Numbered from the stretch's first letter, positions 10,501 through 61,664 are shown. The stretch is DNA of 64,000 bases from Mizuhopecten yessoensis (GCF_002113885.1 NW_018408751.1:531312-595311), one strand, 5' to 3'. Translations and numbers: made by a program. The notes: generated by a model from the sequence alone, not told the origin.

Positions 10501-11664
10501 AAATAATACAAAGTCAACGGTACAACAATACCAATAATGTCGAATGCATTGTTGTGTCATTAACGTTGACATGCGCACAAGGAATGTGTTAATACATTCT
10601 CGCAACAATAAATGGTAATTAGTTGTACTACATACACGTTAGAATTTAGTTTAAATATGAATGATATAATGTTTAGTTACCATCTGTCCACTTCCATCTA
10701 CCCTCACTGTCATGGTCAGTTGCCCCTATCCACACACCCCAGTCTCCCCAGTGCATGGACTTCAGTGTGTTGTAGAGGAAGTCCTGTTTGTCTTGGTCCT
10801 TAATCTGCACCAGACGACCTCCATTGCGGTGGCAGTTGGAGTTGGCACCGTTCCAGGAATATTTTCCAGTGATGAGGTAGAGACAAACATCATTATACGA
10901 CTTCACGTATTGTGTCCGCGGCAAAGGGGGCGGGCAATCTCCCAGGTCGTCAACAAGGCTACCATTTACTAGACAACGTGATAGATATCAATGTAAAAGA
11001 ACGCTAGGTACTTGACAAATGGAGTCATCAAGATAATACAAGAAATATTCATAATAAATTAAAACATCTAGACCTCGATTATAAGTTGTTTGAAACAAAC
11101 CTGAAAATGAACATTCGCGAAAAAAATGGTTTTACAGTATGCAGTGACCTGTAAATATATAATATCTTTTATATAAGTAATAATATCTTAAAATTTCTCC
11201 GATTCTTTACCGATAATTTTTCAGTTTTAGACGCGAGAAGTTCTTCTGACAACCCATATCATATAGGCAAGCTACACGCGCCTGTGGAGTAACAACGCCA
11301 ATAGTTGAAAGACGTCATCATTTTTTTCAATCAAATGACTTATTACAGCTAGGCGGAAGTCGTTAAACGAACTCTTTTTCCCCCGGAGTTGTTTCACTGG
11401 CGGAGAAAATGGTATCACGTGGGGAAAATTATATCTTTACCTAGGAATAATAGACGATTATGTGAGATTCTGTTATGTGATCATTTGTAAGCGTTGTTCT
11501 CAGACAAAACATACTTACCCAAGGGATTCATTTTGACATTAACTCAATTAGGAAAAGATTTCACTAGACTTGCCTCCCAAAATATAATTTAATTAATATA
11601 ACTTACCTGCTGCCCAAGCTCCTACGATAAGCAGTAAAAGTTTCGAGGATATCATTCTTAACAT
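7578..11664 (-). CDS. Type I transmembrane C-type lectin with mucin stalk and NPxY tail (CTL-B), about 473 aa
   Basis: Seven exons: 11664-11607 (MLRMISSKLLLLIVGAWAA), 10968-10681 and 10385-10212 (CTLD), 9643-9017 (stalk), 8736-8656 (AKKRTSGVDIIDEALMSQNDDSSDGST), 8103-8028 (TM: TYIAIGAGSCGVVILVAAILALVL), 7695-7578 (RRRNRQSIAETYDQTTNTKDNPLYDIMHGNGLVPENSFA*). Total 1422 nt, open, all GT-AG with matching phases. Confidence 0.9.
9090..9625 (-). repeat. Coding minisatellite encoding the (MP-Tn) mucin stalk of CTL-B
   Basis: 18/21 bp units GGCATGGTTGTTGTTGTGGTA and GGCATGGTTGTAGTAGTA. Confidence 0.9.
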
Positions 11665-16148: not shown

Positions 16149-19100
16149 TCATTCCTCCATCAAATCAAAGGGATCCGAGTCGTACGCATCTTCAGTGTCG
16201 ACTGCAGCAGGCAAGGTAGATACAGATGTTATTCTTACTTCTTGTATTTCAGGCTTTTGATCACTCACAAGAAGATCCAATGAGAATCCATCATCTTCAT
16301 CAGATTCTTGTGTGTGCATCTCTGGCACTGTCTGTTCATCATTACAGGGTACAAGATGAATTTCACTGTTCACAGGTGCCACCGTCACTTTTGATTCCAT
16401 GGTCACTGTAGCAGGTGCTGAAAATGAAACTTTTTTCGGACATGTTTTTTTTCTTGGTGACGTGTGCAGATTTTTGGGTACAACTTTAGTATCACAAACG
16501 GTGCACTCTTCAACATTTTTCAGCGGTGTTGTTTCTGATGCTCTGATCAAGTTCCTCTCCTGAACTGGGGAAGAGACATTCTGTGCCATGGATTTCTTGG
16601 GAGGAACATTTTTGTCGGAACTGTTTTGTGAGTGGTCATCTGATGCTTTCTCATTAGAAGATGTCTCTGGAACTGCAAACAGATTTTTTTTCGATTTCTT
16701 CTTTTCTGGTTTTGTTATTGGATTCGTTTTCCTTTTTCTCTCTGGCGTGATAGGGGGACTGCTTGCCTCACATTTTTTGTTTTTCTTTCCTTGCTTAGGA
16801 TGATTTTCACATTCTTCATCGCCTAGTTCCATAGTAAAAATATCACTGTCAAACTTCATTGTTGTAGTTGTGGATGTAGCAAATTTTTCTTCAGTTGAAA
16901 CTTCTTTTTTGACACAAGTGTCACTTTTTGAAACGTTGCAAACTTTATTTTCTGCTAATTCTACCAATGTTCCCACAGAAAAAGTAGTTTTGTAAGCTTT
17001 TTGCACTGCTTGTTCCTTGATTTTCTTCACTCTTTTCTTCTTGTTATTCTCTGATGCTTTTCCAGGCACACCCTCAAGTTTCTGTTGTTTAGATTTCTTT
17101 GAGACAGTTTTTTCTCCTTCCTTGCTCATGTTTTTCCTTTTTGTACCTGTTAATGTATGTGTTAACATAAAACAATTATATCTGAATGATGAACAATAAA
17201 ATTTTAATTGGGCTACTCTCTCAAACTATAGCTGTGAAGCAATTCAAATGCAGAATGAAACCTTCAACTTTGTTTTGAACTAAATATTCAATAATCCTGT
17301 ATACTGCAAAAAACAAATATTTAAAGTGTGGAAATCACATTTTTACTCTTTAAATTACAATTGTGATGTAAAAAAAATTTGATAACAATCAAATGGAATG
17401 GAATTGATAGTATGTCTAAATGTATTTACATGCTTATTTTAACACTGGTTTGGTGAACCTAAAGTGATTAAAAAGTTCTACAATGCAAAAGTTTACACTT
17501 TGCAGCAATTTGTTCGTGATATTAATTCACTAATTTGACATTTATAGGTTTGATGTTATCTTTATTTTCTTCTTCATTTAAATTCTAATCCTTGGCGCTG
17601 AACTACAGATCTGAAGCTAAATTGCACCTTCTTGTATTTAAGTGAAAGAGTACTTCACTCAGGTCTGAAAAATATATAAATCATTTTTGATCTACCCACC
17701 AAACCTATCGTGTGAACAATATTTTAGAGTGTGGAAAATGGACAAAGTTCATCAATTTCAAATATCCTACATGATATCATGTAATATACCTTTAGGTTTT
17801 TTTATTGGAGAAACATCCTTCCTGCTTTCTGTGGGTCCTGTGAACATCTCACATTCAGTATTTGTAGGAAGGTAGTCTTCATCTGAAAACAGCCCCCAAG
17901 TAATAGGGTAACAAAAATACATTTAGTTGACGGTTTAAGAAACAATTCATCATGACATATAGGTTCACCTGCCTTTTGGAAGCAACCTTAAAAACTTTAA
18001 GCCACCTTTTCCAAAAAGCATTTGCAATTTCTCTCATAATTTGAAGCCATATAATCATATGAATTTACCATTGTCATCACTCAAAATCTGGCTTCCAAGA
18101 GAATCCAAGACATCTTCTATTCCCTTCAGGATCGAGTCTGGTTGGTCAGAAAGCATCTCATCGACAGTGGCCGAGTCCAACATATACATGGTCAGGTCCT
18201 GGTGCTCGGCATTGTTTTCGCTGGTGTGGTCCTTTGGTTTCTTCACCTTCTTCTTGCTTTTCTTTGGTGTCAACTTCACTCTACAATGCTTCTTTACTGT
18301 CAAAGTAAAACGGCAATGCCATCTCATTTAATTTAAGTATTTAAAAAAAAAAAAAAAAAAAAAAAAATTACTTGCAATCATCAGCTGTTTAATTTATCTA
18401 GTGACATGTTAAATAATGAAAATTGAAACAACAATAACAGCTAAAGATAATCACTTTTAGTTAAATGTCAATCAATTTCTTGTATGTCTCTTGTATGTCT
18501 TAAATTAAACATGAGTCTATCCTTTAAATATTCAACTAAAGGAAATAAACGCGGTTATATAGTTATAACTGCATAGTAAATGTTTTTATATTTCTTATCC
18601 AGCTATCATTTCCATCAGCTGTCAGTGCTGGCTTCATGTTTCATCATTTATCAACAGTGTAAAGGGAGGTAAGCAGATAATAAAATTAACAGTTCCCAAT
18701 TTCAAATAAACAATCTATCTATACTTTCACATAATGAATATATGTCTGTCAAGTAACATTTCTATCTTATTTGAATTATTTAATCTTCAGCAATAAACCG
18801 CTTTTGTAAACTGCCCCCCCCCCCCCCCCCAAGTTTATTTTTGTGCTCTTACTTTTCCTAGATTTTGTTTCATCCTCAGCCCATTTGCCTTTAAATTGAG
18901 CACTGAAGCTAAACTGTTTCAGTCTCTCCTGAAAAAAAATGTAAATATTTATCAAAAAATTGTGCATAGGAAAATTTTTTCAAGTACCACCTGGTAAAAG
19001 CCTTTGACAAAATAAATCACTTCAAATTCCCGTACAATGATAGCACAAAATTCCTTAAAATATTCATGTTTTATTGCAGTTGAGAACATTCAAGTTTTGT

Positions 19101-22100
19101 TTAGCAGTATTAGTTTAGTTCCTTTCACGCTATTTGTATCTCTGCTGCAATAACTAGTCATTGTCATACATAGTGAAATAGAAAGTAATGTGGGTTTTTT
19201 TTATAACATTTCCTCAAAAGCTAAGTCAGTACATTAATTTATAATTGGGCTATTAGATCAGATAACTTAGATCAAAATTAAGGTTGTACTTAATATACAA
19301 GTACATCCACGGTTTATTCAAAAATGCTGAAAGGAAAACTTTAGATATTTGCCTGACCTTTGTAGGTAGTTCAAGGGCAGCTAATGCATTTTGTGTTGCA
19401 GCTTCAACTTCTTTCTTAAAATTTGGTCCTTTGGATTTCTGAAAAATTATAAATTTACATACATAACGAAAAAAACATATATGTATATATATATATATAT
19501 CAATCATTATGTTTCTTATATAACTTAAGTCAGCGTTTTTTTCTTGGGCAATCAAACTGTTACCAACAATTTGTCAAGTAAACTGTACATAGGGGAAATA
19601 CAAGGGTTCATATCTATTTGTTATCAACTATACTGGACAAAAAGATACCAGCAATGCAAAACATGTTCACTATATTGAACATGCAGGAAATAGTGTTAAA
19701 ATTGTGAAATGAAATAAAGAAACACATGGTGTTAAATTGTCCACAATAACATGTACTAGACAATGGGGAACTACACATTGCTACAACTGTTCATTACACA
19801 GCATTAGAGAAATAAAATAAATAGAGTTCAATCTACCCACTATAAAGTGCAATGAGAAACAAAATAAATGGTGTTCAATCTACCTACTATAAAGTGCAAT
19901 GAGAAACAGAATAAAGGGCCATGAGAAACAAAATAGAGTTCAATCTACCCATTATAAAGTGCAATGAGAAACAGAATAGATGGTGTTCAATCTACCCACT
20001 ATAAATTGCCATGAGAAACAAAATAAATGGTGTTCAATCTACCCACTATAAAGTGCAATGAGAAACAGAATAAATGGTGTTCAATCTATCCCAATATAAA
20101 ATGCAATGAGAAACAGAATAAATGGTGTTCAATCTACCCACTATTAAGTGCAATGAGAAACAGCATAAATAGAGTTCAATCTACCCACTATAAAGTGCAA
20201 TGAGAAACAAAATAAATGGTGTTCAATCTACCTACTATAAAGTGCAATGAGAAACAGAATAAAGGGCCATGAGAAACAAAATAGAGTTCAATCTACCCAT
20301 TATAAAGTGCAATGAGAAACAGAATAGATGGTGTTCAATCTACCCACTATAAATTGCCATGAGAAACAAAATAAATGGTGTTCAATCTACCCACTATAAA
20401 GTGCAATGAGAAACAGAATAAATAGATTTCAATCTACCCACTATAAAGTGCAATGAGAAACAGCATAAATAGAGTTCAATCTACCCACTATAAAGTGCAA
20501 TGAGAAACAATAGATGGTGTTCAATCTACCTGCTATAAAGTGCAATGAGAAACAGATTAAATAGAGTTCAATCTACCCACTATAAAGTACAATGAGAAAC
20601 AGTGTTATAAAGTTGAAACTAGAAAATGCCTGAAAGACATGAATGCCCCTGGCAGGGTCATAAAAAATGGTATATTTGCTGGACAAGGAAATTATAGTAA
20701 AAAGGTCCAACTATACTAGACAGTTGTAAAGAGGTAAATTTGCCCACTACATGTATATACTTTGACAATGAGTGTTGGTGTTAATATTGTTCAATATAAT
20801 GACCAACACAGAAACACATTGTGTTCAACTTAAAATTGTCCAATTTACTGAAAAATGGTAGAAATAATTGAAGCATAGAAGATATAATTAATTTATGATA
20901 AACCTACCTTTGTCAAATAGAGGCCTTTGTTCAAGTCCTCACCTCCGTGGTGGAAAGGCAGCATTGCCGAGGCCTTCACCCAAGCTCGGGATACTTTGTT
21001 GTCCAAGTATACTACATGGTAGTGACTCTGGGGACAACACATAATACAGTGTACATATATTACAATTTCTGTTTAGAAAATTTATTTTAAATAACATCAT
21101 CATGGTTCCTAGAAATTAGAAATAAGATAAAGTTTTATTTGTTAGATCAACTGAAATAAATACCTTTGATATTACTACACATCAGTACTGTATCATCAAA
21201 CCTTTTAGTTTTTGTTACATCATTTCCCAGGGTTCTTAATTAATGTTTTAGCGAAAGGCTCTCACGTGACATGCTTGTTACTAACTGTTTAAATATTTTA
21301 TCAGAAATAAAAGTAGGATTCATGAAACACAAAACTGACTATATATATTTTGATGTGAAAACTTTGTCATTTTTTAGTGCACATGGACTTCCTTGTGTTT
21401 CAGAATTGCAACGTATCAGGGATCATCCTGGAGGAGGCCATGGGGCCATTGACCCCTCAAAACTGAAATTGACCACTACATGTACCAACTTTCTTTTAAT
21501 TTTACATAAGACGGCCCTTCTTAATTTTGATATTGACTAGAAATTGCTGTAAATGACCCACTGCTCTCAAATTCCAGGATTTTCCCTGCGTATGAGTTGA
21601 GAAAATTGAAATCTCAGTTAGAAATACACAGAGGCATATCTAAAAATAATTTATGTAAAACTAAGAGTTATAGGGAGAAAATGTCATGGTGCCAGTGTAG
21701 ATGATTATATTTAATAACACTTACTGGAAACATGCTGTTTTCTGATACAAGTTCAAAGAAGGTTTCTGTGTCAGGATCAATCTCAACCATAGCTGGCCAC
21801 CTGTCCAATAATTCATAAAAAAATAAATTGGAAAGAGCATAAAGAATAAAGAGTATTATATGCTGTGTGTAATTTAATTTTCATACCTTATAGAATTTCA
21901 AAAGATGATCTGTGCATTAATATGTCTCAGTGATTTTGTTACAAATGTATACACTTATGACAAATGTCCTTATAAGGCAACACAATCTATGGACATTGAC
22001 AGTTAATTAAGGCTGCAATCTGCCAATGGCACCTGTGATGTATGATTGAGAATGTTTCCAGTACACAATTCCTGTGAAAGAGTTGTTTAGAGCCAATCTG

Positions 22101-25100
22101 GCCAAATTTCTTCAGTTTAGCCACTCAGAAAAAGATGTCATTTGAAGAACTTGTTCTGGACAGACAGATAAATGCCAATTAAAATATGCTATGAGCTCGT
22201 CGAAGTTCAAACCAGGTGGGCTGAAAATTAAAAATGGAAATGTGTAAACTGTACCATGGATAACCGACCATCCTGGCCCACACAATGCTGCCCTCGGAAT
22301 ATCTGGTGAAGATATGATCAGATTCATCATAATCCTGCTCTCTCTTCTCACAGCTGTCATAGGATGTGTCTAAAAAGAAAAATATAAATGAGCAAGCTAT
22401 GTACTTTGGCTGGGAAAGTTTGAAAGTTTTGCTTCTGACCAAGTCTGACATTTGGTTGCTTCCTTGTCAGGCATGCCAGTTGATTATCACACCTCTGCCC
22501 TTCCCAACACAATATGTATAGATGTAACCTAAAGAATTACCTGTTAATAGCAAAATTTGTTTTCTGTGTCTTTGAATATCTCATTAATCTGGGCAGTACT
22601 AAGGTTCCCATAAAAAATCTGGATTAATCAATTTCAAGGACATATGGATGTATCATCCGTGACCTGATTTCCATCTCTAGTAAAACTATCCCAGTTCTGT
22701 AACACAAGTTTCTGGATTTACAAGTAAAATTGCCAATGTTGTAATTCATAACCAGGGGCCGGTGACTGAACTGCAACTTTTTCAGACTAATGGAGCCAAG
22801 ATCAAGGCGTAACATGTATGAAATCATTAATCAATATGTATAACACTCTACATGTATAATACATGAACATATTGTTATTTAGAAATTCGGTATTTATAAA
22901 TTATAATGCTAGACGAATAGATCTTGTTGACAAGTTACAGATAAAGGAGGCTCACAAATGGGGCAAGTGTCTGGGTAAAATAACATTTATTTGTGGGGAA
23001 GCTAGCTAGGGCACTTATGCTGGGATATGAATAAAGAAGCTATAGGTACATACCTTTGTTCATTTCACAAATCCATTTATCATCAATTTCAGTAGGATCA
23101 TTGATGTCTTGTAGAAATCTCCACTTTTGACAGGCTGTATTGGAGCATTGTACCCAGGTTCCTGAAGACAATTATAATCCATTACCTTACAGCACTTCAG
23201 ATATCACGAGTGTACAAATCTCTTGATTGTTTCTGCTAACCCTGCTTACCCTAGATTTGTGTGCCTACCCTAAATTTTTCATTGGCATTTGGTGATATGC
23301 ACTTTTAAAGTCAGAACTCCTGCTTTATATATGCAATGCAAAAATATTTTCCAAATAAAAAATAAATGCCTACTTATCTACCCTATTTTTTTGAAGACGA
23401 TAGTGGAAACACAAGTGATTTTGTTTTTTGTCCTAATAAAATGTTGCATTGAAACACTGAATAAAAAGAAGATACAGTATATTGTCCTGAACTTATGCAC
23501 AAGTATTTAATACTGTAACATTTTTGTACCATTACCTTAGGCAATTTCAACTGATTGAATTGTGGTATTCCTACAGCATCTTAACTATGGTTTTAATAAT
23601 TCACTTTTCCATATTTGGTAACTGAGTATATGACAATATGCCCTGATATTTACGGAGGGTTATTCCATAATCAATTGTACGGGGGAGGTGGGAGGCACCT
23701 GTATTAATATATTATGGGTGGTGCGGTTAAAACCAGGTCTGCCTACCTTTTCTTATATTAAATCACATTTTAGATTTCATAGGTGGTGGGGTCTTTAACC
23801 ACACTGATTAATACTCATTACAGAGTCTTTTATCATTTGAGTTGTTAAGTGTTTTGAGTTACCTGTTTCTTGAATTTCTCTCTCCATCATCAACTGCTTT
23901 TTACTTATTCCAGGCTGATCTTTGACAATGTCATTTACATTTTCTGCAAATTCTGTTCTCTTTCCTTTCTTCTTCTTCACCACATCCATCATTTTCTTTT
24001 TTCCCTTTTTGATTTCTTGATAGTCATTAATAAAAATGTTTGATCACTATTGCACATTAAATATGTATAACTACTTAATATCATAAACCATCCATAAAAA
24101 AAAATATGAAATAAAAGCATTTATCCTGCAAGTAAACAATTTCTTTATGGATTATTTTTCTTTTCTTTTTTATCTAATTTTTAGATTGGGGTCAAATTCA
24201 GAAAAAATATGCTCATAAGATCTCATCTAAAAGGAAACAGGTTTATTTTTTATATTTTTTTACAAACTTTAAAATGAAAATATTCTGTGAAAAATTAGGT
24301 ACATTGTTTGGCGGGATCATAAAAGATGCAATTGTATAATACACAAGTTTTTCTTTAACTTTTATGATTCATTTGACAAATTCAAAATATTTAAAGATCT
24401 ATTAGAAGGTATAGGACATTTATGAATTGTCAAAGATCCCATGACCAACCATCAAATAACAAAAATTACAATGAACTGACGTAATAAAACAAAAAGTTGA
24501 TAGAAACTGGATTTCTCAAGCAGCCATGCCTGACTATTAACTTCCTTCCTGACCTTCTAGTAAAATTATTTTGAAAAAAGTATTCTAGTAAACCTGTTCA
24601 AGAAAATGAAACCAAAAGAAACTACTTAAAGGGAAAATTGAAATTTACATAGCGCTTTTGTAATTGTGTTCTTACCGATGGGTTTTGGAAAGTGTAATTG
24701 TCTGGGTGCAAGCACTTTGGCAGCACTGTTTCTATCAGCTTTCTTCATAGCCTTCTTCACAAGGACAACCGGTGTGTGTTGTTGTTTTTTGTCCTCTTCG
24801 CCATTGAATTCCAATTCACTTCCCTCGGGTGTGTTCTCGTTTAGTTCCTGCACTTGTGCACACTCAACCATTCTACAATATAGTGAATCCCACTAAATGT
24901 CATGTTGCTTTAATGTCATATTAATGTTACTACATTAGATTTCGCTTATTATCACTTCTGATTTGTTAGATGAAAATATGATATTAACCGGAACATGACA
25001 TAAAGAAAATACGTGTTTTTTTTACCTTTTCAGGTGTCAAAACCCAGAAATTACCGTATTTTAATGTCCAAGTGATATGGTAGTACAAAGAAGATAGTTT

Positions 25101-28100: not shown

Positions 28101-31100
28101 TCACCCTAATGGCCCTATACCTTTTGTTTATTGAGGTGACTTTTAAAGATTTATGTACTGTGGACCAGATGTGACCTTGAAAATATGTCAAGGTCATTCA
28201 CATGAACAATTGATCACCCTGGAACCTTAAGTTATTCAGAAGTTTTTAAGACAAATACCCCCCTCCCCCTCCCCCTTTGACCTTGAATATGGGTGAAGGT
28301 CATTCATTTGAACAAACTTTGTAGCACTTTATCCCAGCATGCTAATGGCCAAATATCATCATCCTGGGCCTCTTGGTTATTTAGAGGAAGTTGTTTAATA
28401 GTTTAAACATATTTGACCCCTGTGACCTTGAAAATGGACAAAGGTCATTCATTTGAAGAAACTTGATAGCTCTTTATTCCAGCATGCTACAGTCCAAATA
28501 TTATCAGCCTGGGTATCTTGGTTATTCAGAAGAAGTTGTTTAAAGTGTTCAACATATTTGACCCCTGTGACCTTGAATATAGGCAAAGGTCATTTCTTTT
28601 CACTTATTTTGTCAGGCTTTATCCTAGGAATCTACCGACCAAATATCACGCTTCTTGGCCTTTTGTTTATTCAGAAGACGTTTAAAGGTTTTAACAAATT
28701 TGACCCCTGTGACCTTGAATATGGGTCAGGGTCATTTCTTTTCGCAAACCTTGTCAGGCGTCATTCTAAAAACTTATTAGCCAGATATCATGCTTCTGGG
28801 CCTTTTGGTTAATCAGAAGAAGTCGTTTAAAAGGTTTTAACAAATTTGACCCCTGTGACCTTGAATATGACAAAATATTTCCTAGTGCTATTACTAAAAT
28901 ATCAAAATTAATTAGTGTTTCTATTTGATTTGGTTTTCCTTGTTCTCATTTTCCTTACTTTCCAGTTTTTTTTCAGTTGGATATTTGACTATCCAACAAT
29001 AATATTGTTGGATAGTCAAATATCCAACTGGACTTCATTAAGTGTTCACAATGAATGACGTCACAGGGATTTTTTAACATCAGTTCTTATTAAACAGTCA
29101 ATATCAATCAGTATCTATGATAACAAATGATCAATTTGGTTTAATGGTGAATTCTACATCTATTCAAAAATCTTCTTCGACTTCAATACCTACTTAGGAC
29201 TGGGGGCCAGAAGGCTCCTAAAATTCAGGAGGGACCAACTGATCCCCTGAATTTCTGTTCATAGTGACCCACCTGACCCCAGCTATGCTATTTATGCCTG
29301 ATTTTTGGAAACTAAGAGGTTTCAGCTACAATTTCTGGCACTGCAGGTTTTTCTTTTTTCAGAAAGGTTGCCCGAGGAATATTCAATAAAATGTTGGTTT
29401 TTTATTATTATTAAAACTTTGCTACATGGACTTTCACTTGCTTGTGAGGCTTTGACTGCTCATCAGGTCGTCAAGGTTTTAAGGAGGACTCCCAAATTTC
29501 TTTGTAATACATTTTTGTGCAATAATTCATAGTATCTTACTGTCTTAAAGACGAACTTTGAAGAGTTGCTTCAACCTTGAAATATATAATATTACTACTG
29601 CAGTGAACTAGAGACACTTGGTAAGGTTCTGACAATTCTGAACATAACAGGAATGATATATAATGAAAGGTACGAAAGTGTCAGTCAGGATAAGAAGATT
29701 TTTTGTTTAATATATAATATGTGTTTTTACCTCAGTTTCCTTCAGTTTTGCCTTTTTACTTTTTGTCGTATTTTCCTCTTTATTGCATTCAGATGAGATG
29801 GGTGTCTGAACTGAATCATCCTAAATAAAATGAAAATAACATTGCAATTAAGTCACAAAGTGTTTTGAAACAGAAAATTAACAGATGTACAAGCATCATG
29901 ATCTATCAGAAGGGACAATGAAAATCAGTTATTTTTCTATGACTTACGGCAGGAAGAACCTCAGCCCCACCAGTCATACTTGATTTCTTGGTATTTTTTG
30001 GTTTCACAGAATCTTTTTCTTTATCCACATCATTACTTTGTTTTTTAATTGATTTCTTGGTCTCTTTTGGCTTCACTTCCTTTGATCCAACGCTTTCCTG
30101 TGAAATAAGATACAAAGATACATAAAGTACTACAGGGGCAGAACAATATATGCCTGTCATATATGCCATGCATCCCATAACAAAGTGACATATATAATGT
30201 AATGGTGAAATAAAACAAGAAGAACCTTCATTTGTACTCCATTACAGAAGAAAATTAAATCATTTCTTGTATGTGGTTAAAGGGGAAAACACTTTGTACT
30301 TTACTAGCCGGTGAAAGAGTAAATAAGCCTCAAGAATCATAAAAAAATCTTTAACTGTATTAGAATAGCCTCCCTTTGCCCACATTTCAATTCATCTTTT
30401 AAAATGTACTTAATTACAACCAGATTTTGCTCAAATTATAACTTAGTTTTTGTCATTGTATATAGTTCCATCAGAACCAGAATCCATTTATATTTGTTTT
30501 TCCCCGTTATTACGCTTAAGCCTAAGCTTTTGTATAATGTATATGCTTAACCAAAGTTTCATCAACACATAATAATCTTAAAGCAATTATCTTATTTTGT
30601 AGAAATCAAAGTGTGGACATACGCTCCCCATACCAGATCTTGTCTAAATTTCATTTTTTACATCTACAAAGAAGTATAACAATGTCATCTATTTTGAAAA
30701 AAACTTGACAGTCCTTCATCCCAGTAAACTTTATATCATTACCCTAGGCATTATGGTTCTTTATATGTTTATTTATTTGAATAAATAATAGAAATGGCTT
30801 TAAAACCTTTGTATCTTTGGATTTTTTTGGCTTCTTTTTCTTCTCTGATTTTTCATTCTTGTTTTTCTTCATGTCATCATTCAATCCCTATTAATACAAG
30901 AATAAATTCACAATCAAAATTAACATGTTGCATTTTGCATAATTCATATTAAATTTTTCAATTTCAAATATTCCTGCATTAATTTCACAATCCAAAATTA
31001 ATTGCTAAATCAAAAAAATTGTTGTGAATATTATTATCTGAACCTCTGAAATAATTTCTCCCTGACTACATATTTATCAAGTCAATTTTCAACTCCACTG

Positions 31101-33199
31101 CCAATTGAATTTTTTGGAGTTTTTCTTTTTTTTATTGTACTCAGTTCAGAGTTGTATTTCATTATTATAATCATACTAAGCATATTTCAGAAAAAACATT
31201 GATGTACACACAATTGCAGATGCTGTCAAATTTTCGCAGTCATTGAGTGTTAACATTATTTAAATTCAAAAGAAAAACATGTATTTAATTTGCAATATTT
31301 AGCTATATGGGCTGGATTCCAAGGTTTCTTTATTATATTCATCTTTTTAATTTTTATTTTAGAAAATTAGATAGAAAATTACTCTATCATAAAGCAATAA
31401 ATTTAAAGTGATGATCGATCATGAATTTTAATATCTTTCTCATATTCTTTCAAATCTATGTTTACCTGTTCAACTGGATCTATGCTCTTCTTTGGTTCCG
31501 TTTCTTTTGTTTTCTGGGGTTTTACTTTTCCAACTGTATCACCATTGCTCTAATGGGTAGGGATGAAAAAAATTATATACTAGGGGTGTCACAATACGCC
31601 AAGAGTGTATCCCGATATATTGTCATAGGACAGATGTGCTAAATTTTATAATAAGTTGTTGTCAGACTGTTATCAAACTGAATCATATATGATATGGATT
31701 ACATAGATTTAAGATTTTTGTCAAACCGACCATCGATTACAAATGTTTCCACATAAATTTCGAAAATTTCCATAAAGAAGAAGTTGTTTGAAGTAATTGA
31801 TCACAAACAGACCTCCAGGGAGAACAATGGAAGCCATGCTTTAGGCTCAGTTTGATCCCTTGGATCAAGTCAAGTTAAGAAAAGTGGAGGGGTTCTAAAT
31901 TTAAAAATTGTAATTGCTACATAATAAATACCATTGATGGTGCCTTCGTAGGAGCCTGAAATCCAGAAGCCTTTTTCTTCTTCATTACTTTGATACTCGT
32001 TGAACTTTTAGATGTTTCTGAATCTTGAACAGATGATGTTGCTTCGGTTTTTTCTTCAGAATCTTTAACAGATGACGTTGCTTCGGTTTTTTCTTCAGAA
32101 TCTTTAACAGACGACGTTGTTTCAGTTTTTTCTTCAAAATCTTTAACAGGTGACGTTGTTTCAGTTTTTCCTTCAGAATCTTTAACAGATGACGTTGCTT
32201 CGGTTTTTTCTTCAGAATCTTTAACAGATGACGTTGCTTCGGTTTTTTCTTCAGAATCTTTAACAGGTGACGTTGTTTCGGTTTTTTCTTCAGAATCTTT
32301 AACAGACGACGTTGTTTCAGTTTTTTCTTCAGAATCTTTAACAGGTGACGTTGTTTCAGTTTTTTCTTCAGAATCTTTAACAGATGACGTTGTTTCAATT
32401 TTTTCTTCAGAATCTTTAACAGGTGACGTTGTTTCAGTTTTTTCTTCAGAATCTTTAACAGGTGACGTTGTTTCAGTTTTTTCTTCTGAGTTCTCTTTAG
32501 CGTCTCCCATGTTATGAATTACTTCCTTGAATTATAAAAGAAAAAAACAAAGAACATAAAAGTATGTACACTTTTGATATATATATAATTAATTGAAGTC
32601 AATTGTTTTTAAACCATTCATGTTGAATGGCAAAACCATTTTGTATGACAATAGGAAAATATGAAGAAGATTTTGATTACAATGAACCAGTTGACTCAAG
32701 ATTTCAAAGGTTGGCCACAGTAACACTAACAACAAGAGTACCGCGGTGGTGGAACAATATACACCCGTTGAATGCCATAAAGTGTTATATACTTTCTTAC
32801 ATTGAAATAAGATCTGCATCATTCTAAGAGTGGTTAGCTGACATGCTATAAAAAATGTAGGAGGAGATTGCCGGACAAGAATCAAATACTGAAATGAACA
32901 AAGGGCAATAACTTTTGCAAAAATCGCTGAATCAAAATTCTTTTAAGGGAGACATAATTTCATATCATGGTTATAATGTATACCAAGTTTCAAAGAGATC
33001 GGTCGAAAAATGTAGGAGGAGATGGCCGGACAAACAAAAGTTTAGGTCGGACGGCCCCATACCATAATACTCTCGTTAAATTTGACGGGCGTATCAAAAC
33101 ACGAACCACTTTATCGACACCGGGTTGGCAGATGACTGGAAGCTCTGCAGATACTTCTGGTAAATCACTTAATTCTGGATCATTTTCCGAAGTCTCCAT
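16149..33199 (-). CDS. ZCWPW1: Zinc finger CW-type and PWWP domain protein (ZCWPW1-like), about 1220-1240 aa
   Basis: Phase-consistent exons: 33199-33107, 32525-31932, 31549-31466, 30887-30807, 30097-29948, 29820-29731, 27778-27673 (TLSAEEWEQVFQSAIDRVM), 26036-25826, 24872-24676, 24015-23800 (alternative donor 23863), 23161-23054 (zf-CW: TWVQCSNTACQKWRFL..KWICEMN), 22369-22255 (SCEKREQDY..GSIVWARMVGYP), 21800-21725 (WWPAMVEIDPD), 21027-20908 (YHVVYLDNKVSRAWV), 19438-19358, 18928-18853, 18296-18069, 17882-17790, 17146-16149. The zf-CW followed by PWWP order defines ZCWPW1/2. The long N-terminus and MEPCE adjacency favour ZCWPW1. Low-complexity exons are less certain than the domain exons. Confidence 0.85.
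19812..20602. repeat. 47-bp intronic minisatellite with a 348-bp higher-order duplication
   Basis: Unit AATAAATGGTGTTCAATCTACCCACTATAAAGTGCAATGAGAAACAG, about 17 copies. The variant AAAGGGCCATGAG occurs at 19913 and 20261. Confidence 0.95.
28010..28870. mobile_element. Degenerate HINE/pearl-like tandem array remnant (about 145-bp units)
   Basis: TTTGACCCCTGTGACCTTGAA..AAGGTCATT recurs at about 28017, 28412, 28557, 28699 and 28846. Termini were not recognised. Confidence 0.65.
28974..29030. repeat. Perfect 57-bp palindrome (28-bp arms, 1-nt spacer)
   Basis: CAGTTGGATATTTGACTATCCAACAATA-A-TATTGTTGGATAGTCAAATATCCAACTG. Confidence 0.95.
32020..32490 (-). repeat. 39-bp coding tandem repeat (12 x KDSEEKTETTS[P/S]V) in a ZCWPW1 exon
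   Basis: Plus-strand unit TTCTTCAGAATCTTTAACAGGTGACGTTGTTTCAGTTTT, in frame within exon 32525-31932. Confidence 0.95.
32731..33099 (-). mobile_element. Short non-autonomous Helentron/HINE-like element in the first coding intron of ZCWPW1
   Basis: Begins AACAAGAGTACCGCGGT, has subterminal inverted motif TACACCCGT/ACGGGCGTA, and is colinear (reverse complement) with 42461-42718 plus 44788-44891. Confidence 0.75.
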
Positions 33200-33319
33200 T
33201 CTTTCAAGTTCTAAACAAAAAAGTAAAAATGTTATATATTATAGACAGGGTAGGTTAGCAATGCTGGCTCTCTGTACTCTGTAGGCTTATACTGTAGTAC
33301 CAAGAAAGATAGTGGTGTG

Positions 33320-33435
33320 CTTCCACCAGGGATCAAACCCGCAACCCCAAGCTTCCCAGTCCAACCTTCTTCTCAAGTACTGATTTAGCTAAAAGGAAAT
33401 TCCCCCTAACTCGAAGCTAGAAGGTGACAGTAATC
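33320..33435 (-). mobile_element. Degenerate tRNA-derived SINE head fragment
   Basis: Minus-strand A-box-like TAGCTAAATCAG and B-box-like GGGTTTGATCCC. No intact cloverleaf. Confidence 0.35.
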
Positions 33436-34039
33436 TTTTGTACAATAAAAATATGACAAAATCATTGAAAGCTAAATTACTAGCAATTCCAACTATATGT
33501 TTAAATTTACCTTATAATGTAGAAAATTTCAACACTAGATATCTGTTCAGTTGTTGTGTCAATAAGAAATCTCAGGTACTGTTATTTATTATAGGCAGGC
33601 TAGTATTAAATGTAACTTGGCTCTCTGTACTCTATATACTGTATATTTATGCAGTTTTAACACAGCTTTCACAGTAATGGATGGTAAATTTGATAGAGAT
33701 CAGAGCCGCCGACTTATAGGTTTAACGACTAGATTCTGGAACCTTAATTAATGTTGAGCTGTTTTCAAATTGTCACTATGTTGGTCACTTGATGAACTTT
33801 ATTACTACTGTTCTCGATTTAATGTGGGTGATTATTGTAAGAATAACCTCTATTCCATGGACTAGAGAATTAGGCAGAATAAATTTATGAACCAGGCATA
33901 CCAAAATCGAATTTCCCGCCTTTCTTACTGTTCAAGATTTTTAAATCTGGTTTAGGCCTATATCAAATTTGTAAATTTTTTGATCGAATTAAAGTGGTTC
34001 AATACACGACAATCTCTGTCTTTTTTCTTACCAATTACA

Positions 34040-34565
34040 CGTATTATTTAAAAAATATTTTCAGTCTTCTTATGTTTACCGCTGGTCCTTTTTGAACAGC
34101 AAACGTTATGTGTTTACATTCAACAGACGACAGCTGCCTACACCACTCGGTCGTGAAATAATGACTCGTGGTTTTATATCAATCGCAAGTGTTACGTCCG
34201 ATGATGTTCCGAATGTTATTTCCCATACCTCATTGCGGTGTTCATGCGCACATCGAGCACTTGCTGAGCAGGAGCACGGAACAAGCTGGGGAACCGAGGT
34301 GGTATTTCTCTCTCAAAGCGGTATTTAAGATATTTGCTGATACATTTATGGAACATTTCATGTTAATTTAACTTCTTTAACTGCATAATTTGAGCGTGCT
34401 CATTGCTGGTAGGCTATATAAAGAGGTTTATATGTAGGTCAATTGACTGTTTTGATGTCCGACTTTGTTAGTGTAGTCATTGCCCGCTAGATGGCGGAAC
34501 TGAGTCGTATTTATGTTGTACACGTGCTGATGTCAACATAAATATTCGTCGCCCCAACGTTCAGA
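34040..34565. promoter_or_regulatory. Candidate bidirectional promoter / 5' UTR region shared by ZCWPW1 and MEPCE
   Basis: The divergent start codons are 1367 bp apart. The region is locally richer in GC and CpG. NRF1-like CATGCGCA at about 34242 and YY1-like AGATGGCGG at about 34489. Possible non-coding-exon donors at about 34031/34079 (minus) and about 34302 (plus). TSSs cannot be determined. Confidence 0.55.
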
Positions 34566-37500
34566 ATGAGTGTCGAGGTAAAGACTCCGACACGGACTCA
34601 GTTCGAGCACACTGAGTTCCACTGTGGTGAGAAACAGTTAAGAAGTGGAAATTCTCCGCCTCTCAGAAAGTTTTCATTCGGTGACAATAAGAACCAGAAT
34701 GAAGGAAAACAGGTCAGGAAACGTCGCTTCAGCCAGTTTCGTGCCGAGACAAACCAGCAACACCAGTCTTTTGGCTTCAGGAGAAAGAGGCTGAAGTCCA
34801 TGCCATCAGAAACAATAGTGCTTCCTACTAAATTTCTTCTTGGTGGAAATATCAACGATCCATTAAACCTAAATAGTATGAATGACAAGGAGATTGACAA
34901 AGTGTTAAACGAGAAAACTCCAGTATCTTCGCCCTTACCTACTCCTCTTCATCGACAGAAGGTTGAAGTTCATATTCCAACAAACATCACTGACCCTTTG
35001 AATCTGAATTTAGACGAGGACTGGAATTTGACAAAAGGTGCAAATCGCAATAAGAAAAAGCACAAACATAAAAATAAGAAGAAAGGAGATTCAAGCCAAA
35101 ATACATCCACTTCTTCAGTCATGTCAACATCTTTGTCAAAAGAACCATGCTCTGAAAAACGAAAGGGTCTTCTGGAAGCATTAAGGATTGAAATTGATGA
35201 CGATGACATTGCCGTCCCAAATGCTCCAGAAACTAAAAAGACATCTACAACATCTACTGAGACATCAGAAAGTGCTAAGACAGTGACTGTTAATGTTCCT
35301 AATGCAGATAAAATTGTTTCTCCTGTCATTTCGCAGATTTCACCAAGTAACCCTTTTTACCGACGCCGACGGCGGACTCTAAGCATGAGCGATGCCAGGC
35401 CAGAACCATCTTCATTAGTGTCACGATCCATTTTGAGAACCTCATTAAGTCCACCGAGATATTCATTAGATCAGGACAAAGTCACACCACCAAAAAAGTT
35501 CAAAAGACAGTTCAGTCAAAAACCTGCAGAAAAGACAGCTTCAAGTTCAACTTCACACAAACAATTTTCAAAAAAAGGAAAATTCATCTATGGCAACTAC
35601 AACAGGTATTATGGATATAGAAATCCTGACACTGCAGATGATCACAGACTGATTTCCTTCAAGAAAGAGTGGTTTGAGGGAAAGGATGCAATTGACATTG
35701 GATGCAATGTTGGACATGTGACATTAGCGATAGCAAAAGAAATGCATCCTCGTAAAGTTATAGGAATCGACATTGATTCTAGTTTGATTGCTGCTGCTAG
35801 AAAAAATGTGAGACATTATATCTCAAAAGAGAACACGGGAAGTTTTCCCATTTCAAATACTCTGAGTTACGGTCCGATTGCTGCCCCACCAGTGAATGAA
35901 GCCAACAGCCACCCAAAGTTTCCACACAATGTTGTGTTTGTACAGGTAATTATCAACCTTAAATGTATAATTAGTAATTGCTTAAACAGACACTTTTCAT
36001 GCATATCGTAACCGTATTAATGTAGTGAGCTTAATTACATAAAGATATTACCCATTTCTTGCTTGGCTCCTTCAATACTTATTGTAAGTGTTTCTAAGGT
36101 GCTTTGAAAAACAATGAACCAGGGCTGATCCAGTGCAGGAGGGTTCAATATGGAGTTAGGGACAAGGAGCCGGGGGAAGTAGTTCAACCCCGGGATAACT
36201 CCGGCCAACATTGTGAAGATCAATCCANGGGGAATTTGCTCATTTTACTTTTGTATCATTATATTTGTGCTCATGCAGCTTACTTTTTTGGAGTTAATTT
36301 TTGATGGGGCCTTTTTGCCTCATTCTGGTAAGAAAATGTACCAATTAGGAAAGAAATTTTCAGGAGTAAACTGCAAGTTTTGGGAATTAGGCAAAAATAT
36401 GAAATAGTTGAAATTAGGATGGTACACATTATTGGCTCCAAAAAGTCCCCAAAAATAAACACTAACTGTATTAGTGTATACTTCATGTACAGTTGTATAT
36501 ATATGGCTGTTATTGTACATTAGATATCATGTATTTACAGGGAAATTATGTACCCGAGAGAGAAGAACTTCTAGAACTGGAAAAAGAAGATTATGACGTC
36601 ATCTTAGCTTTAAGTCTGACCAAATGGGTTCATCTCAACTTTGGTGATGATGGCCTTAAGCGGATGTTCAAGAGAATCTACCGACAGCTGCGACCTGGTG
36701 GGAGACTGATTTTGGAGCCTCAGCCCTGGTCCTCATACAAGAAAAAGAAGAAATTGACGGTAAGTGTTTCTAACCGAGTCGAGCATTGGTTCACATATGA
36801 CGTTCCAGACAACTTTTGTGCTGTCACCATATATGTTCAGCAAAATAGTTGCCAATACAAATGGGTTAAGCGATATCTTGATTTAGGAATGTGCACAAAC
36901 AGAAAGAGACATGGGACATGGAAAAATGTTTTGCAAGATGGCGGCGTATTAAATGATGGACATGGGTAAACTAATGTAGTACAGAACATTTACTTAAATG
37001 ATCGATGGACATTGTTATTGAATTTTATTGCACTTCCCGATGTAAAAAAAAGTTTTGAAAACTGAATTTCTCTAAATACCTATGCTCAGGAAACACTGAT
37101 AAAATGTACCCAGGCATAAACCAGTAGAAAGGCTAAATGTACGTGAGCATTTAATAACTGCTGATTCAGAATTGTAAATATTTTCACTTTGGTATTCAGT
37201 CAAGTAAGATTAGTATATTTATTTTATCTTTATAAATTAAATGTAGTCATCACTTCGTTCCTTGTGTAAAAATACTGAAAATCTTATAATTTCAGCCTGA
37301 GATTTTTGAAACCTTCAAAAGCATCTCCTTGAAACCAGAGCAGTTCTCTGACTACCTTCTGTCAAAAGAGGTCGGATTCTCAACGTGTGAGGTTGTAGAC
37401 ACTCCATTCAACAAGTCTAAAGGTAGGTATAGTTGGAAAGTGGTACCTGAAACAAAACCAGTGATTGTAATACTTACTTTCCATAGGGACCTGTGTTTTG

Positions 37501-37975
37501 TGACTTTTGGAAAATATTTGCATTGGTTTGGGAAAATACAGCAAAAATATTTTAGGGGAAGGGACCCTTGTATATCCTAAAAAATCTCTGAAAAGAGAAT
37601 TTTCTGTTAAAAAAGATTTATTTATATTTATCAAAATTAGACAACATATCATAAAGTATGTTCAATAGTAGGGATTGGTAAAATAAGAATATCAACTAAT
37701 TCACAGATGATAATAAAAAAAAAATGTATATTCAGCTCTTGATATTGAATTACAAAATAAAAATATGAATTAATTTTACTTACGTTTCAGGTTTCCGTAG
37801 GACTATCCAGCTCTTCACAAAAGCAGAAACGGCAGCCAACAGCCCAAAACAGGACGACTCTGCAACTATTACTGAAACAGCAGCTAGTGCCCCAACTCCG
37901 ATAAGTCCAGAGCAAAATATGGAAGCATCGGAAACATGTGCTGGACTGGAGAATACAAAACCAAATGAGAGCTGA
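34566..37975 (+). CDS. MEPCE: 7SK snRNA methylphosphate capping enzyme (Bin3 family SAM-dependent methyltransferase), about 636 aa
   Basis: Exons 34566-35945, 36541-36759, 37296-37422, 37791-37975 (1911 nt, open). Family motifs: [31 protein letters not shown] motif [20 protein letters not shown]|[69 protein letters not shown]. Confidence 0.97.
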
Positions 37976-61168: not shown

Positions 61169-61664
61169 ACCTGTATAAAAGGTGACACATTGACTGTTTT
61201 TACCTGACAGGTACACCTGTATAAAAGGTGACACATTGACTGTTTTTACCTGACAGGTACACCTGTATAAAAGGTGACACATTGACTGTTTTTACCTGAC
61301 AGGTACACCTGTATAAAAGGTGACACATTGACTGTTTTTACCTGACAGGTACACCTGTATAAAAGGTGACACATTGACTGTTTTTACCTGACAGGTACAC
61401 CTGTATAAAAGGTGACACATTGACTGTTTTTACCTGACAGGTACACCTGTATAAAAGGTGACACATTGACTGTTTTTACCTGACAGGTACACCTGTATAA
61501 AAGGTGACACATTGACTGTTTTTACCTGACAGGTACACCTGTATAAAAGGTGACACATTGACTGTTTTTACCTGACAGGTACACCTGTATAAAAGGTGAC
61601 ACAGTGACTGTTTTTACCTGACAGGTACACCTGTATAAAAGGTGACACAGTGACTGTTTTTACC
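61169..61664. repeat. Near-perfect 46-bp minisatellite (about 11 copies)
   Basis: Unit ACCTGTATAAAAGGTGACACATTGACTGTTTTTACCTGACAGGTAC. Confidence 0.97.

What the first reader, a model, noticed from the sequence alone, without database searches (positions are those of the whole stretch)
16149..37975. ZCWPW1-MEPCE head-to-head pair apparently conserved between an invertebrate and human
Seen: a zf-CW/PWWP gene (minus strand) and MEPCE (plus strand) diverge from a shared region, with start codons only 1367 bp apart. Established (recalled): human ZCWPW1 and MEPCE are also adjacent and divergent at 7q22.1. Inference: the bidirectional unit predates the protostome-deuterostome split. Its retention would imply a constraint that couples a meiotic H3K4me3/H3K36me3 reader to the 7SK/P-TEFb capping enzyme through one promoter. 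The MEPCE intron positions (after NVVFxx, after ..KLT, within SKG) also appear to match the human gene.
Basis: partly seen in the sequence, partly recalled or inferred. Interest (0 to 1): 0.8.

Follow-up and report, generated by a model that had tools for sequence, protein, structure and literature searches.

The report
Ancient ZCWPW1–MEPCE back-to-back gene pair
In this scallop sequence a histone-mark reader gene (ZCWPW1-like) and the 7SK RNA capping-enzyme gene (MEPCE) sit back to back, and I found the same arrangement in oyster, abalone, an annelid, a tick, amphioxus and a frog, so it is a real gene pair dating to early bilaterian animals, one more example of a known kind of conserved gene neighbourhood.

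Summary
The window is Mizuhopecten yessoensis (Yesso scallop). A zf-CW/PWWP gene lies on the minus strand (CDS 33199 down to 16149). MEPCE lies on the plus strand (CDS 34566-37975, four coding exons). Their annotated start codons are 1367 bp apart.

The same divergent pair is present in oyster, abalone, the annelid Owenia, a tick, amphioxus and Xenopus. It is listed for human and mouse in a 2010 survey. It was not found within 10 kb in a sea star, Nematostella or a sponge. The outer neighbours differ in every lineage. The pair is therefore an island of conserved gene order that most likely dates to the bilaterian ancestor.

The MEPCE exon plan is identical from cnidarian to frog: exons of 219 nt and 127 nt, intron phases 0, 0, 1.

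Not shown:
- One promoter or a functional coupling of the two proteins. No TSS or expression data were available, and spacers range from 0.7 to 8.7 kb.
- ZCWPW1 versus ZCWPW2 orthology by tree. No ZCWPW2 sequence could be obtained.

Verdict: real, ancient, and a new member of a known class (conserved 5'-5' microsyntenic pairs). Moderate interest.

The parts
16149..33199 (-). ZCWPW1-like gene (zf-CW + PWWP), CDS span of the long isoform. The 865-aa isoform ends at 17767.
   Evidence: Annotation of the same contig gives zf-CW and PWWP, with the CDS start at 33199. P0121 maps exactly on 17 exons. The last exon is homologous to the Pecten C-terminus.
33107..33199 (-). First coding exon of the ZCWPW gene (METSENDPELS...). 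The ATG is supported by the annotation only.
   Evidence: Not conserved with the Pecten protein.
31932..32525 (-). Coding exon 2, with a 39-nt x 12 tandem repeat (32016-32486) that encodes KDSEEKTETTSPV-type units.
23054..23161 (-). zf-CW exon (GTWVQCSNTACQKWRF...WICEMNK), intron phase 1 on both sides.
22255..22369 (-). 115-nt exon holding the end of the CW finger and the start of the PWWP domain (..GSIVWARMVGYPW). The same 115-nt exon with phases 1 to 2 occurs in tick, amphioxus and sea star.
19358..21800 (-). Rest of the PWWP domain in three exons: 21725-21800 (WPAMVEIDPD..), 20908-21027 (SHYHVVYLDNKVSRAW..) and 19358-19438.
16149..17147 (-). Last exon of the long isoform, ending in the conserved acidic tail ..YDSDPFDLMEE (16152-16181) plus the stop codon. 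The 5' border is approximate.
   Evidence: ORF; tblastn of the Pecten ortholog; C-termini of the orthologs.
33200..34565 (.). Spacer between the two start codons (1366 bp, GC 0.37, CpG o/e 0.79). It must hold both promoters. The TSSs are not mapped.
34487..34526 (+). Conserved promoter-like block upstream of MEPCE: YY1-like CTAGATGGCGG (34487-34497) and E-box CACGTG (34521-34526).
   Evidence: The same two motifs, in the same order and spacing, occur in oyster and Owenia. The tick also has the E-box.
34566..35945 (+). MEPCE coding exon 1: a long disordered N-terminus plus the SAM-binding motif region. It ends ..NVVFVQ, followed by a phase 0 intron.
36541..36759 (+). MEPCE coding exon 2 (219 nt, Bin3 domain), followed by a phase 0 intron.
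37296..37422 (+). MEPCE coding exon 3 (127 nt), followed by a phase 1 intron.
37791..37975 (+). MEPCE coding exon 4, with the stop codon.

Best explanation
This is a conserved ancestral microsyntenic pair. One zf-CW/PWWP gene of the ZCWPW1 lineage and MEPCE have stood 5'-to-5' on opposite strands since at least the last common ancestor of protostomes and deuterostomes.

Shown:
- The two genes and their layout.
- Their presence in the same orientation in seven sampled animals from five phylum-level lineages.
- The unrelated outer neighbours in each lineage.
- The deeply conserved exon plans of both genes.

Inferred:
- The pair persists because the short 5' spacer carries the regulatory sequences of both genes, so a breakpoint there would damage at least one of them. 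MEPCE is probably the essential, broadly expressed partner.
- In the scallop the likely layout is a core promoter close to the MEPCE ATG (YY1-like motif plus E-box at 34487-34526). ZCWPW transcription may start nearby on the other strand and be spliced across a 5'UTR intron to the ATG exon, which is preceded by a strong 3' splice-site-like tract.
- No functional link between the two proteins is needed for this.
For: Identity of the genes.

Divergent ZCWPW(-)/MEPCE(+) pair, with the gap between CDS starts:
- scallop, 1367 bp
- Saccostrea, 683 bp
- tick Ornithodoros, 1113 bp
- Branchiostoma lanceolatum, 2421 bp
- Owenia, 3911 bp
- Xenopus tropicalis, 4103 bp
- Haliotis, 8703 bp
All except the short Haliotis piece were confirmed by tblastn.

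Further adjacency evidence:
- Consecutive locus tags in Potamilus (CHS0354_012347/_012348) and Xenopus (XENTR_v10010454/_10010455).
- Human and mouse pair, 952 bp apart, in PMC2871058 Table S5.

Outer neighbours differ: C-type lectins in the bivalves, PPP1R35 in Xenopus, OST48 and Got1 in the tick, SCO1 in amphioxus.

Conserved gene structure:
- MEPCE exon plan in six species.
- ZCWPW 115-nt exon and intron phases.
- ZCWPW C-terminal motif.

Gene trees follow the species groups, with vertebrate ZCWPW1 next to amphioxus and the scallop inside Lophotrochozoa.

A conserved promoter block lies upstream of MEPCE.

Background: about 600 such pairs are known, and they are enriched for the 5'-5' orientation (PMC3514665).
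Against: - The pair is absent within 10 kb in the sea star Patiria, in Nematostella and in the sponge Oscarella. It is therefore neither universal nor shown to be older than Bilateria.
- Spacer length varies 13-fold. Part of the scallop spacer looks like repeat or mobile-element relic by eye, although the only repeat the tool found there is a 19-nt direct repeat. A compact shared promoter is therefore not demonstrated.
- No motif common to all spacers was found.
- No TSS, RNA-seq or co-expression data were available.
- ZCWPW2 was never placed in the tree.
Confidence: 0.7

Rival explanations
1. Functional coupling. The two genes are kept together because one bidirectional promoter must co-regulate a germline H3K4me3/H3K36me3 reader and the 7SK capping enzyme, so the proteins' functions are linked.
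For: - The 5'-5' orientation is conserved in all seven species.
- Spacers are short in oyster, tick and scallop.
- Conserved divergent pairs are often co-expressed or functionally related (PMC3514665, PMC2871058).
Against: - There is no expression or TSS evidence here.
- From the literature, ZCWPW1 is a meiosis and testis factor (PMC7494361), and an oyster CW-PWWP gene is male-gonad biased (PMC12111275). MEPCE is, to my knowledge, broadly expressed. Those patterns would not be simple co-expression.
- Spacers reach 8.7 kb.
- The sea star has separated the genes and kept the ZCWPW gene.
Confidence: 0.12
2. Neutral persistence. The pair survives simply because a spacer of about 1-4 kb is a small target for rearrangement breakpoints, with no selection on the linkage.
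For: - Spacers are short.
- The pair has been lost in at least one bilaterian lineage, Patiria.
- It is absent in the sampled cnidarian and sponge.
Against: - Breakpoints have hit both outer sides of the pair in every lineage sampled, since the outer neighbours are all different. None has hit between the genes over several independent lineages, each hundreds of millions of years long.
- In Haliotis, Xenopus and Owenia the spacer is not especially small (3.9-8.7 kb), yet the pair is intact.
Confidence: 0.15
3. The naming is off. The invertebrate gene is a pro-ortholog of both vertebrate ZCWPW1 and ZCWPW2 (duplication in vertebrates) rather than a strict ZCWPW1 ortholog. The pair is still ancient, but it is 'ZCWPW-MEPCE'.
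For: - The scallop and tick CW domains are equally similar to human ZCWPW1 and ZCWPW2 in the PDB (35.3 vs 36.6 bits and 38.1 vs 36.8 bits).
- Only one CW-PWWP gene per invertebrate species turned up in my searches.
Against: - The amphioxus and sea-star CW domains lean to ZCWPW1 (51.5 vs 36.3 bits and 51.5 vs 46.2 bits).
- A Hydra CW-PWWP protein leans to ZCWPW2 (36.5 vs 21.9 bits).
- A 2026 preprint reports both paralogs in 26 of 28 cnidarians (10.64898/2026.09.07.749791). That would make the split pre-bilaterian and the MEPCE-linked gene the ZCWPW1 ortholog.
- The C-terminal acidic tail is shared with vertebrate ZCWPW1.
Confidence: 0.3
4. Independent (convergent) juxtaposition of the two genes in protostomes and chordates.
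For: None beyond the patchy distribution: absent in the sea star, Nematostella and the sponge.
Against: The same two genes, in the same orientation and as nearest neighbours, occur in five phylum-level lineages. The chance per genome is of the order of 1 in 40,000.
Confidence: 0.01

Closest known systems
Conserved ancestral microsyntenic pairs (CAMPs) of Irimia et al. 2012 (PMC3514665), for example HSPE1-HSPD1
   Same: Two unrelated genes are kept adjacent across phyla. The orientation is 5'-5' and conserved. The intergenic distance is short. The surrounding gene order is scrambled.
   Different: I could not check whether this pair is among their roughly 600, because the supplement is not held. 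Co-expression and a shared promoter, which were shown for HSPE1-HSPD1, are not shown here. The pair was not found in the cnidarian or the sponge I sampled, whereas about half of the CAMPs predate Bilateria.
Human and mouse ZCWPW1-MEPCE divergent pair (PMC2871058, Table S5, row 923)
   Same: The same two gene families, divergent transcription, and a spacer of similar size (952 bp in human against 1367 bp between CDS starts in the scallop).
   Different: That survey of 64 species found the pair only in human and mouse and ranked it 923rd of 924 for conservation. Here it is traced to molluscs, an annelid, a tick, amphioxus and a frog.
Genomic regulatory blocks (a trans-dev gene plus a bystander gene)
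   Same: Linkage is kept by cis-regulatory entanglement rather than by a relation between the proteins.
   Different: Neither gene is a developmental transcription factor. The genes are close and head-to-head rather than one holding distant enhancers in long introns. No conserved non-coding elements were sought in the introns.

Membership tests
MEPCE / Bin3 (7SK snRNA methylphosphate capping enzyme) | C-terminal Bin3 domain (PF06859) after a SAM-dependent methyltransferase fold | tested here: met
   Bin3 at E = 1e-28 in exon 2. Methyltransf_31, _25 and _12 hits at the end of exon 1, around ..[12 protein letters not shown]...
MEPCE / Bin3 (7SK snRNA methylphosphate capping enzyme) | Orthology to animal MEPCE rather than to the short paralog BCDIN3D | tested here: inconclusive
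   All named best hits are MEPCE or '7SK snRNA methylphosphate capping enzyme', from molluscs to vertebrates. The protein is long (636 aa) with the typical large first exon. The exon plan is identical to Xenopus MEPCE. No tree including BCDIN3D was built.
MEPCE / Bin3 (7SK snRNA methylphosphate capping enzyme) | Gamma-methylphosphate capping of 7SK RNA | not testable with these tools
   This is a biochemical activity. It is inferred by homology only.
ZCWPW1 | zf-CW followed directly by PWWP, with the KWR and PWWP signatures used by Wells et al. 2020 (PMC7494361) to define clear orthologs | tested here: met
   Pfam zf-CW + PWWP on the annotated product and on P0121. The sequence shows ..CQKWRF.. 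and ..GYPWWPAM... W, C, KWR and PWWP are invariant in alignment A1.
ZCWPW1 | Groups with vertebrate ZCWPW1 and not with ZCWPW2 in a tree | not tested
Trees without ZCWPW2 are species-tree-like. The CW-domain similarity to the PDB chains of ZCWPW1 and ZCWPW2 is a tie for the scallop.
ZCWPW1 | Same genomic position as vertebrate ZCWPW1 (head-to-head with MEPCE) | tested here: met
   Xenopus ZCWPW1 and the amphioxus gene are head-to-head with MEPCE, as in the scallop. Human.
ZCWPW1 | Binding of H3K4me3 and H3K36me3; role in meiotic DSB repair | not testable with these tools
   Inferred from domain homology. The only mollusc expression hint is the male-gonad bias of an oyster CW-PWWP gene, which that paper calls Zcwpw2 (PMC12111275). 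I did not establish that it is the same gene.
Conserved ancestral microsyntenic pair (CAMP), 5'-5' class | Non-paralogous genes adjacent in several deeply diverged metazoan lineages | tested here: met
   Mollusca (three species), Annelida, Arthropoda, Cephalochordata and Vertebrata.
Conserved ancestral microsyntenic pair (CAMP), 5'-5' class | Orientation conserved | tested here: met
   Divergent in all seven species (same calls).
Bidirectional-promoter pair (TSSs less than 1 kb apart, shared promoter) | TSS-to-TSS distance under 1 kb and a shared regulatory region | not testable with these tools
   Only CDS-to-CDS gaps are known (0.68-8.7 kb). The TSSs are unmapped. A 3' splice-site-like tract 11 nt upstream of the ZCWPW ATG hints at an upstream non-coding exon.
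Bidirectional-promoter pair (TSSs less than 1 kb apart, shared promoter) | Correlated expression of the two genes | not tested
   No expression data are available in the tools.

The most novel reading that the evidence does not exclude
The ZCWPW1-MEPCE divergent unit is a regulatory module more than 550 million years old. In it, one nucleosome-free promoter region (YY1-like motif plus E-box) drives both genes, so that expression of the germline H3K4me3/H3K36me3 reader is mechanistically tied to the 7SK/P-TEFb pause-release machinery. The linkage would then also serve as the positional marker that separates true ZCWPW1 orthologs from ZCWPW2 across animals.
Probability: 0.1. Interest if true: 0.7.

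Novelty: new member of a known kind. Interest (0 to 1): 0.4.

Why it matters
1. It gives a positional anchor for ZCWPW1 orthology outside vertebrates. That orthology is currently muddled: NCBI names for these invertebrate genes range from 'myb-like protein X' to 'HDGF-related protein 2', an oyster paper calls its CW-PWWP gene Zcwpw2, and a Hydra 'ZCWPW1' looks ZCWPW2-like. This bears on the open question of whether the PRDM9/ZCWPW reader-writer system works in invertebrates.

2. It adds a well-documented, easily tested case to the catalogue of deeply conserved head-to-head pairs. The spacer is small (0.7-1.4 kb in oyster, tick and scallop) and a candidate conserved core element is in hand.

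3. It corrects the published picture, in which the human pair was scored as conserved only to mouse.

It does not by itself show any functional link between meiotic chromatin reading and 7SK capping.

Tried and rejected
- Searching the spliced proteins as joined models. Exons were searched by reference, and the database proteins P0001 and P0121, which are exact matches to the window's exons, served as stand-ins.
- Getting ZCWPW2 for a tree. The big CW-exon search, a word search with P0121 and a profile search with short pieces, meant to let in proteins of about 350 aa, returned none.
- The PDB CW-domain comparison as a substitute. It is too short to decide.
- Look-ups that found nothing on record: Lingula MEPCE and B. 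floridae ZCWPW.
- Rebuilding the exon chain of the 1217-aa isoform by counting codons inside a script. No solution was found, nothing was saved or searched, and I dropped it.
- Looking for a motif shared by all seven spacers (NRF1, ETS, ZBTB33, CRE, ZNF143, Sp1, E2F, DRE and others). None was found. Only the E-box and YY1-like pair near MEPCE in protostomes turned up.
- Calling the scallop spacer element a tRNA-derived SINE. ARAGORN, Rfam and a self-BLAST gave nothing, and only a 19-nt direct repeat was found. It stays an impression by eye.
- Irimia et al.'s supplementary list of pairs. It is not held.
- Deep branches of the CW-PWWP tree are poorly resolved. Hydra, the sponge and the insects are long branches, so I draw no conclusion from their placement.
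- No human contig was fetched, compared or searched. A human ZCWPW1 isoform (P0325) appeared in the list and was not used.

Full report
**What the window is.** The ORF at 34566-36008 (+) is 100% identical, over the region searched, to the NCBI protein '7SK snRNA methylphosphate capping enzyme-like [Mizuhopecten yessoensis]' (P0001, 636 aa). Looking that protein up returned contig NEDP02005424.1 of GCA_002113885.2, whose bases 555877-579286 are window 24566-47975. The window is therefore Yesso scallop DNA. It has a single N at 36228, inside MEPCE intron 1, which I left as it is.

**The observation.**
- MEPCE: Pfam finds Bin3 (E = 1e-28) in the second coding exon and SAM-methyltransferase models at the end of the first. 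An exact spliced alignment of P0001 on the locus gives four coding exons at window 34566-35945, 36541-36759, 37296-37422 and 37791-37975. The intron phases are 0, 0, 1.
- The minus-strand gene: the public annotation has a gene with zf-CW and PWWP whose CDS starts at window 33199. The distance to the MEPCE ATG is 1367 bp, as stated.
- Reading the minus strand shows the CW finger exon (23054-23161) and a PWWP domain split over several exons.
Its last exon is homologous to the C-terminus of the Pecten ortholog and ends in ..SDPFDLMEE.
- One caveat: the ATG at 33199 is supported by the annotation only, because exon 1 has no detectable match in the Pecten protein. If the ATG at 32510 were used, the gap would be 2056 bp.

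Exons were searched by reference. P0001 and P0121, database proteins that match the window's exons exactly, stood in for the spliced products in alignments and trees. In one search a script only counted codons for candidate splice combinations of the long isoform. It found none, and nothing was kept.

**Is the pairing conserved?** I looked up the genomic places of MEPCE or ZCWPW orthologs found, with 10 kb of flank. The same divergent arrangement, a zf-CW/PWWP gene on one strand and Bin3/MEPCE on the other with their 5' ends facing, is present in these species (gap between CDS starts in brackets):
- oyster Saccostrea echinata (683 bp)
- abalone Haliotis rubra (8703 bp)
- annelid Owenia fusiformis (3911 bp)
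- soft tick Ornithodoros turicata (1113 bp)
- amphioxus Branchiostoma lanceolatum (2421 bp)
- frog Xenopus tropicalis (4103 bp, with PPP1R35 downstream of MEPCE)

A tblastn check with MEPCE and ZCWPW proteins against all the loci confirmed both genes and their strands. The exception is Haliotis, where only the unconserved 5' end of the ZCWPW gene lies in the locus. Consecutive locus tags in Potamilus and Xenopus agree.

For human I fetched no genomic sequence. The arrangement is documented in Davila Lopez et al. 2010, Table S5, row 923: ZCPW1_HUMAN/MEPCE_HUMAN, divergent, 952 bp apart, and scored there as shared only by human and mouse.

The pair was not found within 10 kb in three species:
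- Sea star Patiria miniata: the ZCWPW gene has a different head-to-head neighbour and there is no MEPCE match.
- Nematostella: the neighbour of MEPCE is an ABCF3-like gene and there is no ZCWPW match.
- Sponge Oscarella lobularis.

**An island of conserved order.** The genes on the outer sides of the pair are different in every lineage:
- bivalves: C-type lectins
- frog: PPP1R35
- tick: OST48 and Got1
- amphioxus: SCO1

Rearrangements have therefore repeatedly come right up to the pair without separating it. Convergence is not credible. A named gene as nearest neighbour in a named orientation has a chance of about 1 in 40,000 per genome, and it recurs in five phylum-level lineages. The simplest history is a pair already present in the bilaterian ancestor and lost in at least one echinoderm. 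My sample gives no evidence that it is older than Bilateria.

**Are the genes orthologous across these animals?**
- MEPCE: the exon plan is identical in scallop, oyster, Owenia, tick, Xenopus and even Nematostella. It has one long first coding exon, then exons of exactly 219 and 127 nt, with phases 0, 0, 1.
- ZCWPW, gene structure: the CW-PWWP core keeps the same intron positions and phases, including a 115-nt exon, in scallop, tick, amphioxus and sea star. The sponge is near-identical.
- ZCWPW, C-terminus: the proteins share an acidic C-terminal tail, SDPF[DE]..EE in scallop, oyster, chiton, Priapulus and amphioxus. Vertebrate ZCWPW1 ends ..LVLFEE.
- ZCWPW, trees: trees of the CW-PWWP region group the sequences by phylum. 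The scallop sits inside Lophotrochozoa, and vertebrate ZCWPW1 groups with lamprey and lies beside amphioxus. Deep branches are weak and the Hydra, sponge and insect rows are long branches. Each named invertebrate species contributed one gene.
- ZCWPW, pairwise scores: bilaterian sequences are closer to each other (121-184 bits, apart from two comparisons with fast-evolving vertebrate sequences at 97 and 119) than to the Hydra or sponge proteins (85-128 bits).

**The ZCWPW2 question stays open.**

As a weak substitute I compared CW domains with the human ZCWPW1 and ZCWPW2 chains in the PDB:

| Species | ZCWPW1 (bits) | ZCWPW2 (bits) |
|---|---|---|
| scallop | 35.3 | 36.6 |
| tick | 38.1 | 36.8 |
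| amphioxus | 51.5 | 36.3 |
| sea star | 51.5 | 46.2 |
| Hydra protein named ZCWPW1 | 21.9 | 36.5 |

A 2026 preprint reports both paralogs in nearly all cnidarians. Taken together, this leans towards an old ZCWPW1/ZCWPW2 split, with the MEPCE-linked gene being the ZCWPW1 lineage. A vertebrate-only duplication, which would make the scallop gene a pro-ortholog of both, is not excluded. Either way the pair is ancient and only the name changes.

**How it probably works.**
- What is shown is conservation of position and orientation.
- What is inferred is why. Irimia et al. 2012 described about 600 such pairs. They are enriched for the 5'-5' orientation with short spacers, and the explanation given is shared or interleaved regulation. 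I place this pair in that class.
- In the scallop spacer (33200-34565) the GC-richest part is 34100-34300.
- The only element I found conserved across species lies within 80 bp of the MEPCE ATG. It is a YY1-like CTAGATGGCGG (34487-34497) followed 31 nt later, start of the GATGGCGG core to start, by an E-box CACGTG (34521-34526). The same order and spacing occur in oyster and Owenia, and the E-box also occurs in the tick.
- CACGTG occurs only 0.047 times per kb in the window. Four of eight species carrying it in the last 100 bp has a probability of about 1e-5 before correction for the 16 motifs tried.
- On the other strand, the ZCWPW ATG is preceded at 11 nt by a polypyrimidine tract and an AG (33211-33228). 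The ATG exon may therefore be a second exon, with transcription starting nearer to MEPCE.
- This would fit a compact divergent promoter, but it is untested. The spacer tolerates large size changes between species (0.7-8.7 kb) and, in the scallop, what looks like repeat-derived sequence.
It is not needed to explain the linkage.

**Novelty and interest.** Full-text searches found no paper that links ZCWPW1, MEPCE and synteny or microsynteny. The one survey that lists the human pair scored it as conserved only to mouse. I could not check the supplementary list of Irimia et al.. The finding is real and older than previously recorded, but it is one more member of a well-described class. Its main practical value is as a positional marker for ZCWPW1 orthology in invertebrates, which is useful for work on the evolution of the PRDM9 system. 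It is also a compact, testable example of a deeply conserved head-to-head pair.

Noticed in passing
window 34487-34526; L002 about 9885-9925; L004 about 9875-9915; L006 about 9960-9970: A YY1-like CTAGATGGCGG and an E-box CACGTG about 31 nt apart lie just upstream of the MEPCE ATG in scallop, oyster and the annelid Owenia. The tick also has the E-box. This is a candidate conserved MEPCE core promoter in protostomes. It is absent from the amphioxus, Xenopus, Haliotis and Nematostella proximal regions.
   Followed up: partly
L005 1-6044 (Nematostella) and L006 1-158 (tick): An ABCF3-like ABC gene is the head-to-head neighbour of MEPCE in Nematostella. In the tick it lies two genes from MEPCE, in the order ABCF3, OST48, ZCWPW, MEPCE. 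This may be a trace of an older ABCF3-MEPCE linkage.
   Followed up: no
window 32016-32486 (-): Coding exon 2 of the ZCWPW gene is a 39-nt tandem repeat with 12 copies at 93% identity. It encodes KDSEEKTETTSPV-like units. The Pecten ortholog matches it only weakly.
   Followed up: no
window 16152-16181 (-): The ZCWPW protein ends in ..DSDPFDLMEE. The same acidic tail, SDPF[DE]..EE-COOH, ends the orthologs of oyster, chiton, Priapulus and amphioxus. Vertebrate ZCWPW1 ends ..LVLFEE. I know of no described function for this conserved C-terminal motif.
   Followed up: partly
protein P0350 (Hydra vulgaris, named ZCWPW1 isoform X4): Its CW domain is clearly nearer to human ZCWPW2 (36.5 bits) than to ZCWPW1 (21.9 bits) in the PDB search, and it is short (333 aa) like ZCWPW2. 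The NCBI name may be wrong, and ZCWPW2 may predate Bilateria.
   Followed up: partly
window 33211-33228 (-): A polypyrimidine tract plus AG lies 11 nt upstream of the annotated ZCWPW start codon. It looks like a 3' splice site and suggests an unannotated non-coding first exon closer to MEPCE.
   Followed up: no
window 33240-33640: A direct repeat of 19 nt (33265 and 33618) with longer imperfect similarity around it, and a stretch resembling a tRNA T-arm (about 33320-33345). This may be a mobile-element relic inside the spacer. ARAGORN, Rfam and a self-BLAST found nothing.
   Followed up: yes
window 368-2271, 9009-10987, 47542-49622 (all -): C-type lectin genes with Thr/Pro-rich mucin-like repeats flank the pair on both sides. 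The oyster also has a Lectin_C gene downstream of MEPCE (L002 19419-22990).
   Followed up: no
window 42867-44642; 19816-20602; 28272-28869; 61169-61664: Satellite-like tandem arrays: 159 nt x 11; 47 nt in a ZCWPW intron; 145 nt in a ZCWPW intron; 46 nt x 11 at 99% identity.
   Followed up: no
window 36228: A single N in MEPCE intron 1. I left it as it is.
   Followed up: no
L007 1-9029 (Patiria) and L010 1816-9873 (Oscarella): The head-to-head neighbours of the ZCWPW gene in the sea star (644 aa) and in the sponge (992 aa, then 642 aa) have no Pfam hit on record and no MEPCE similarity. Their identity is unknown.
   Followed up: partly
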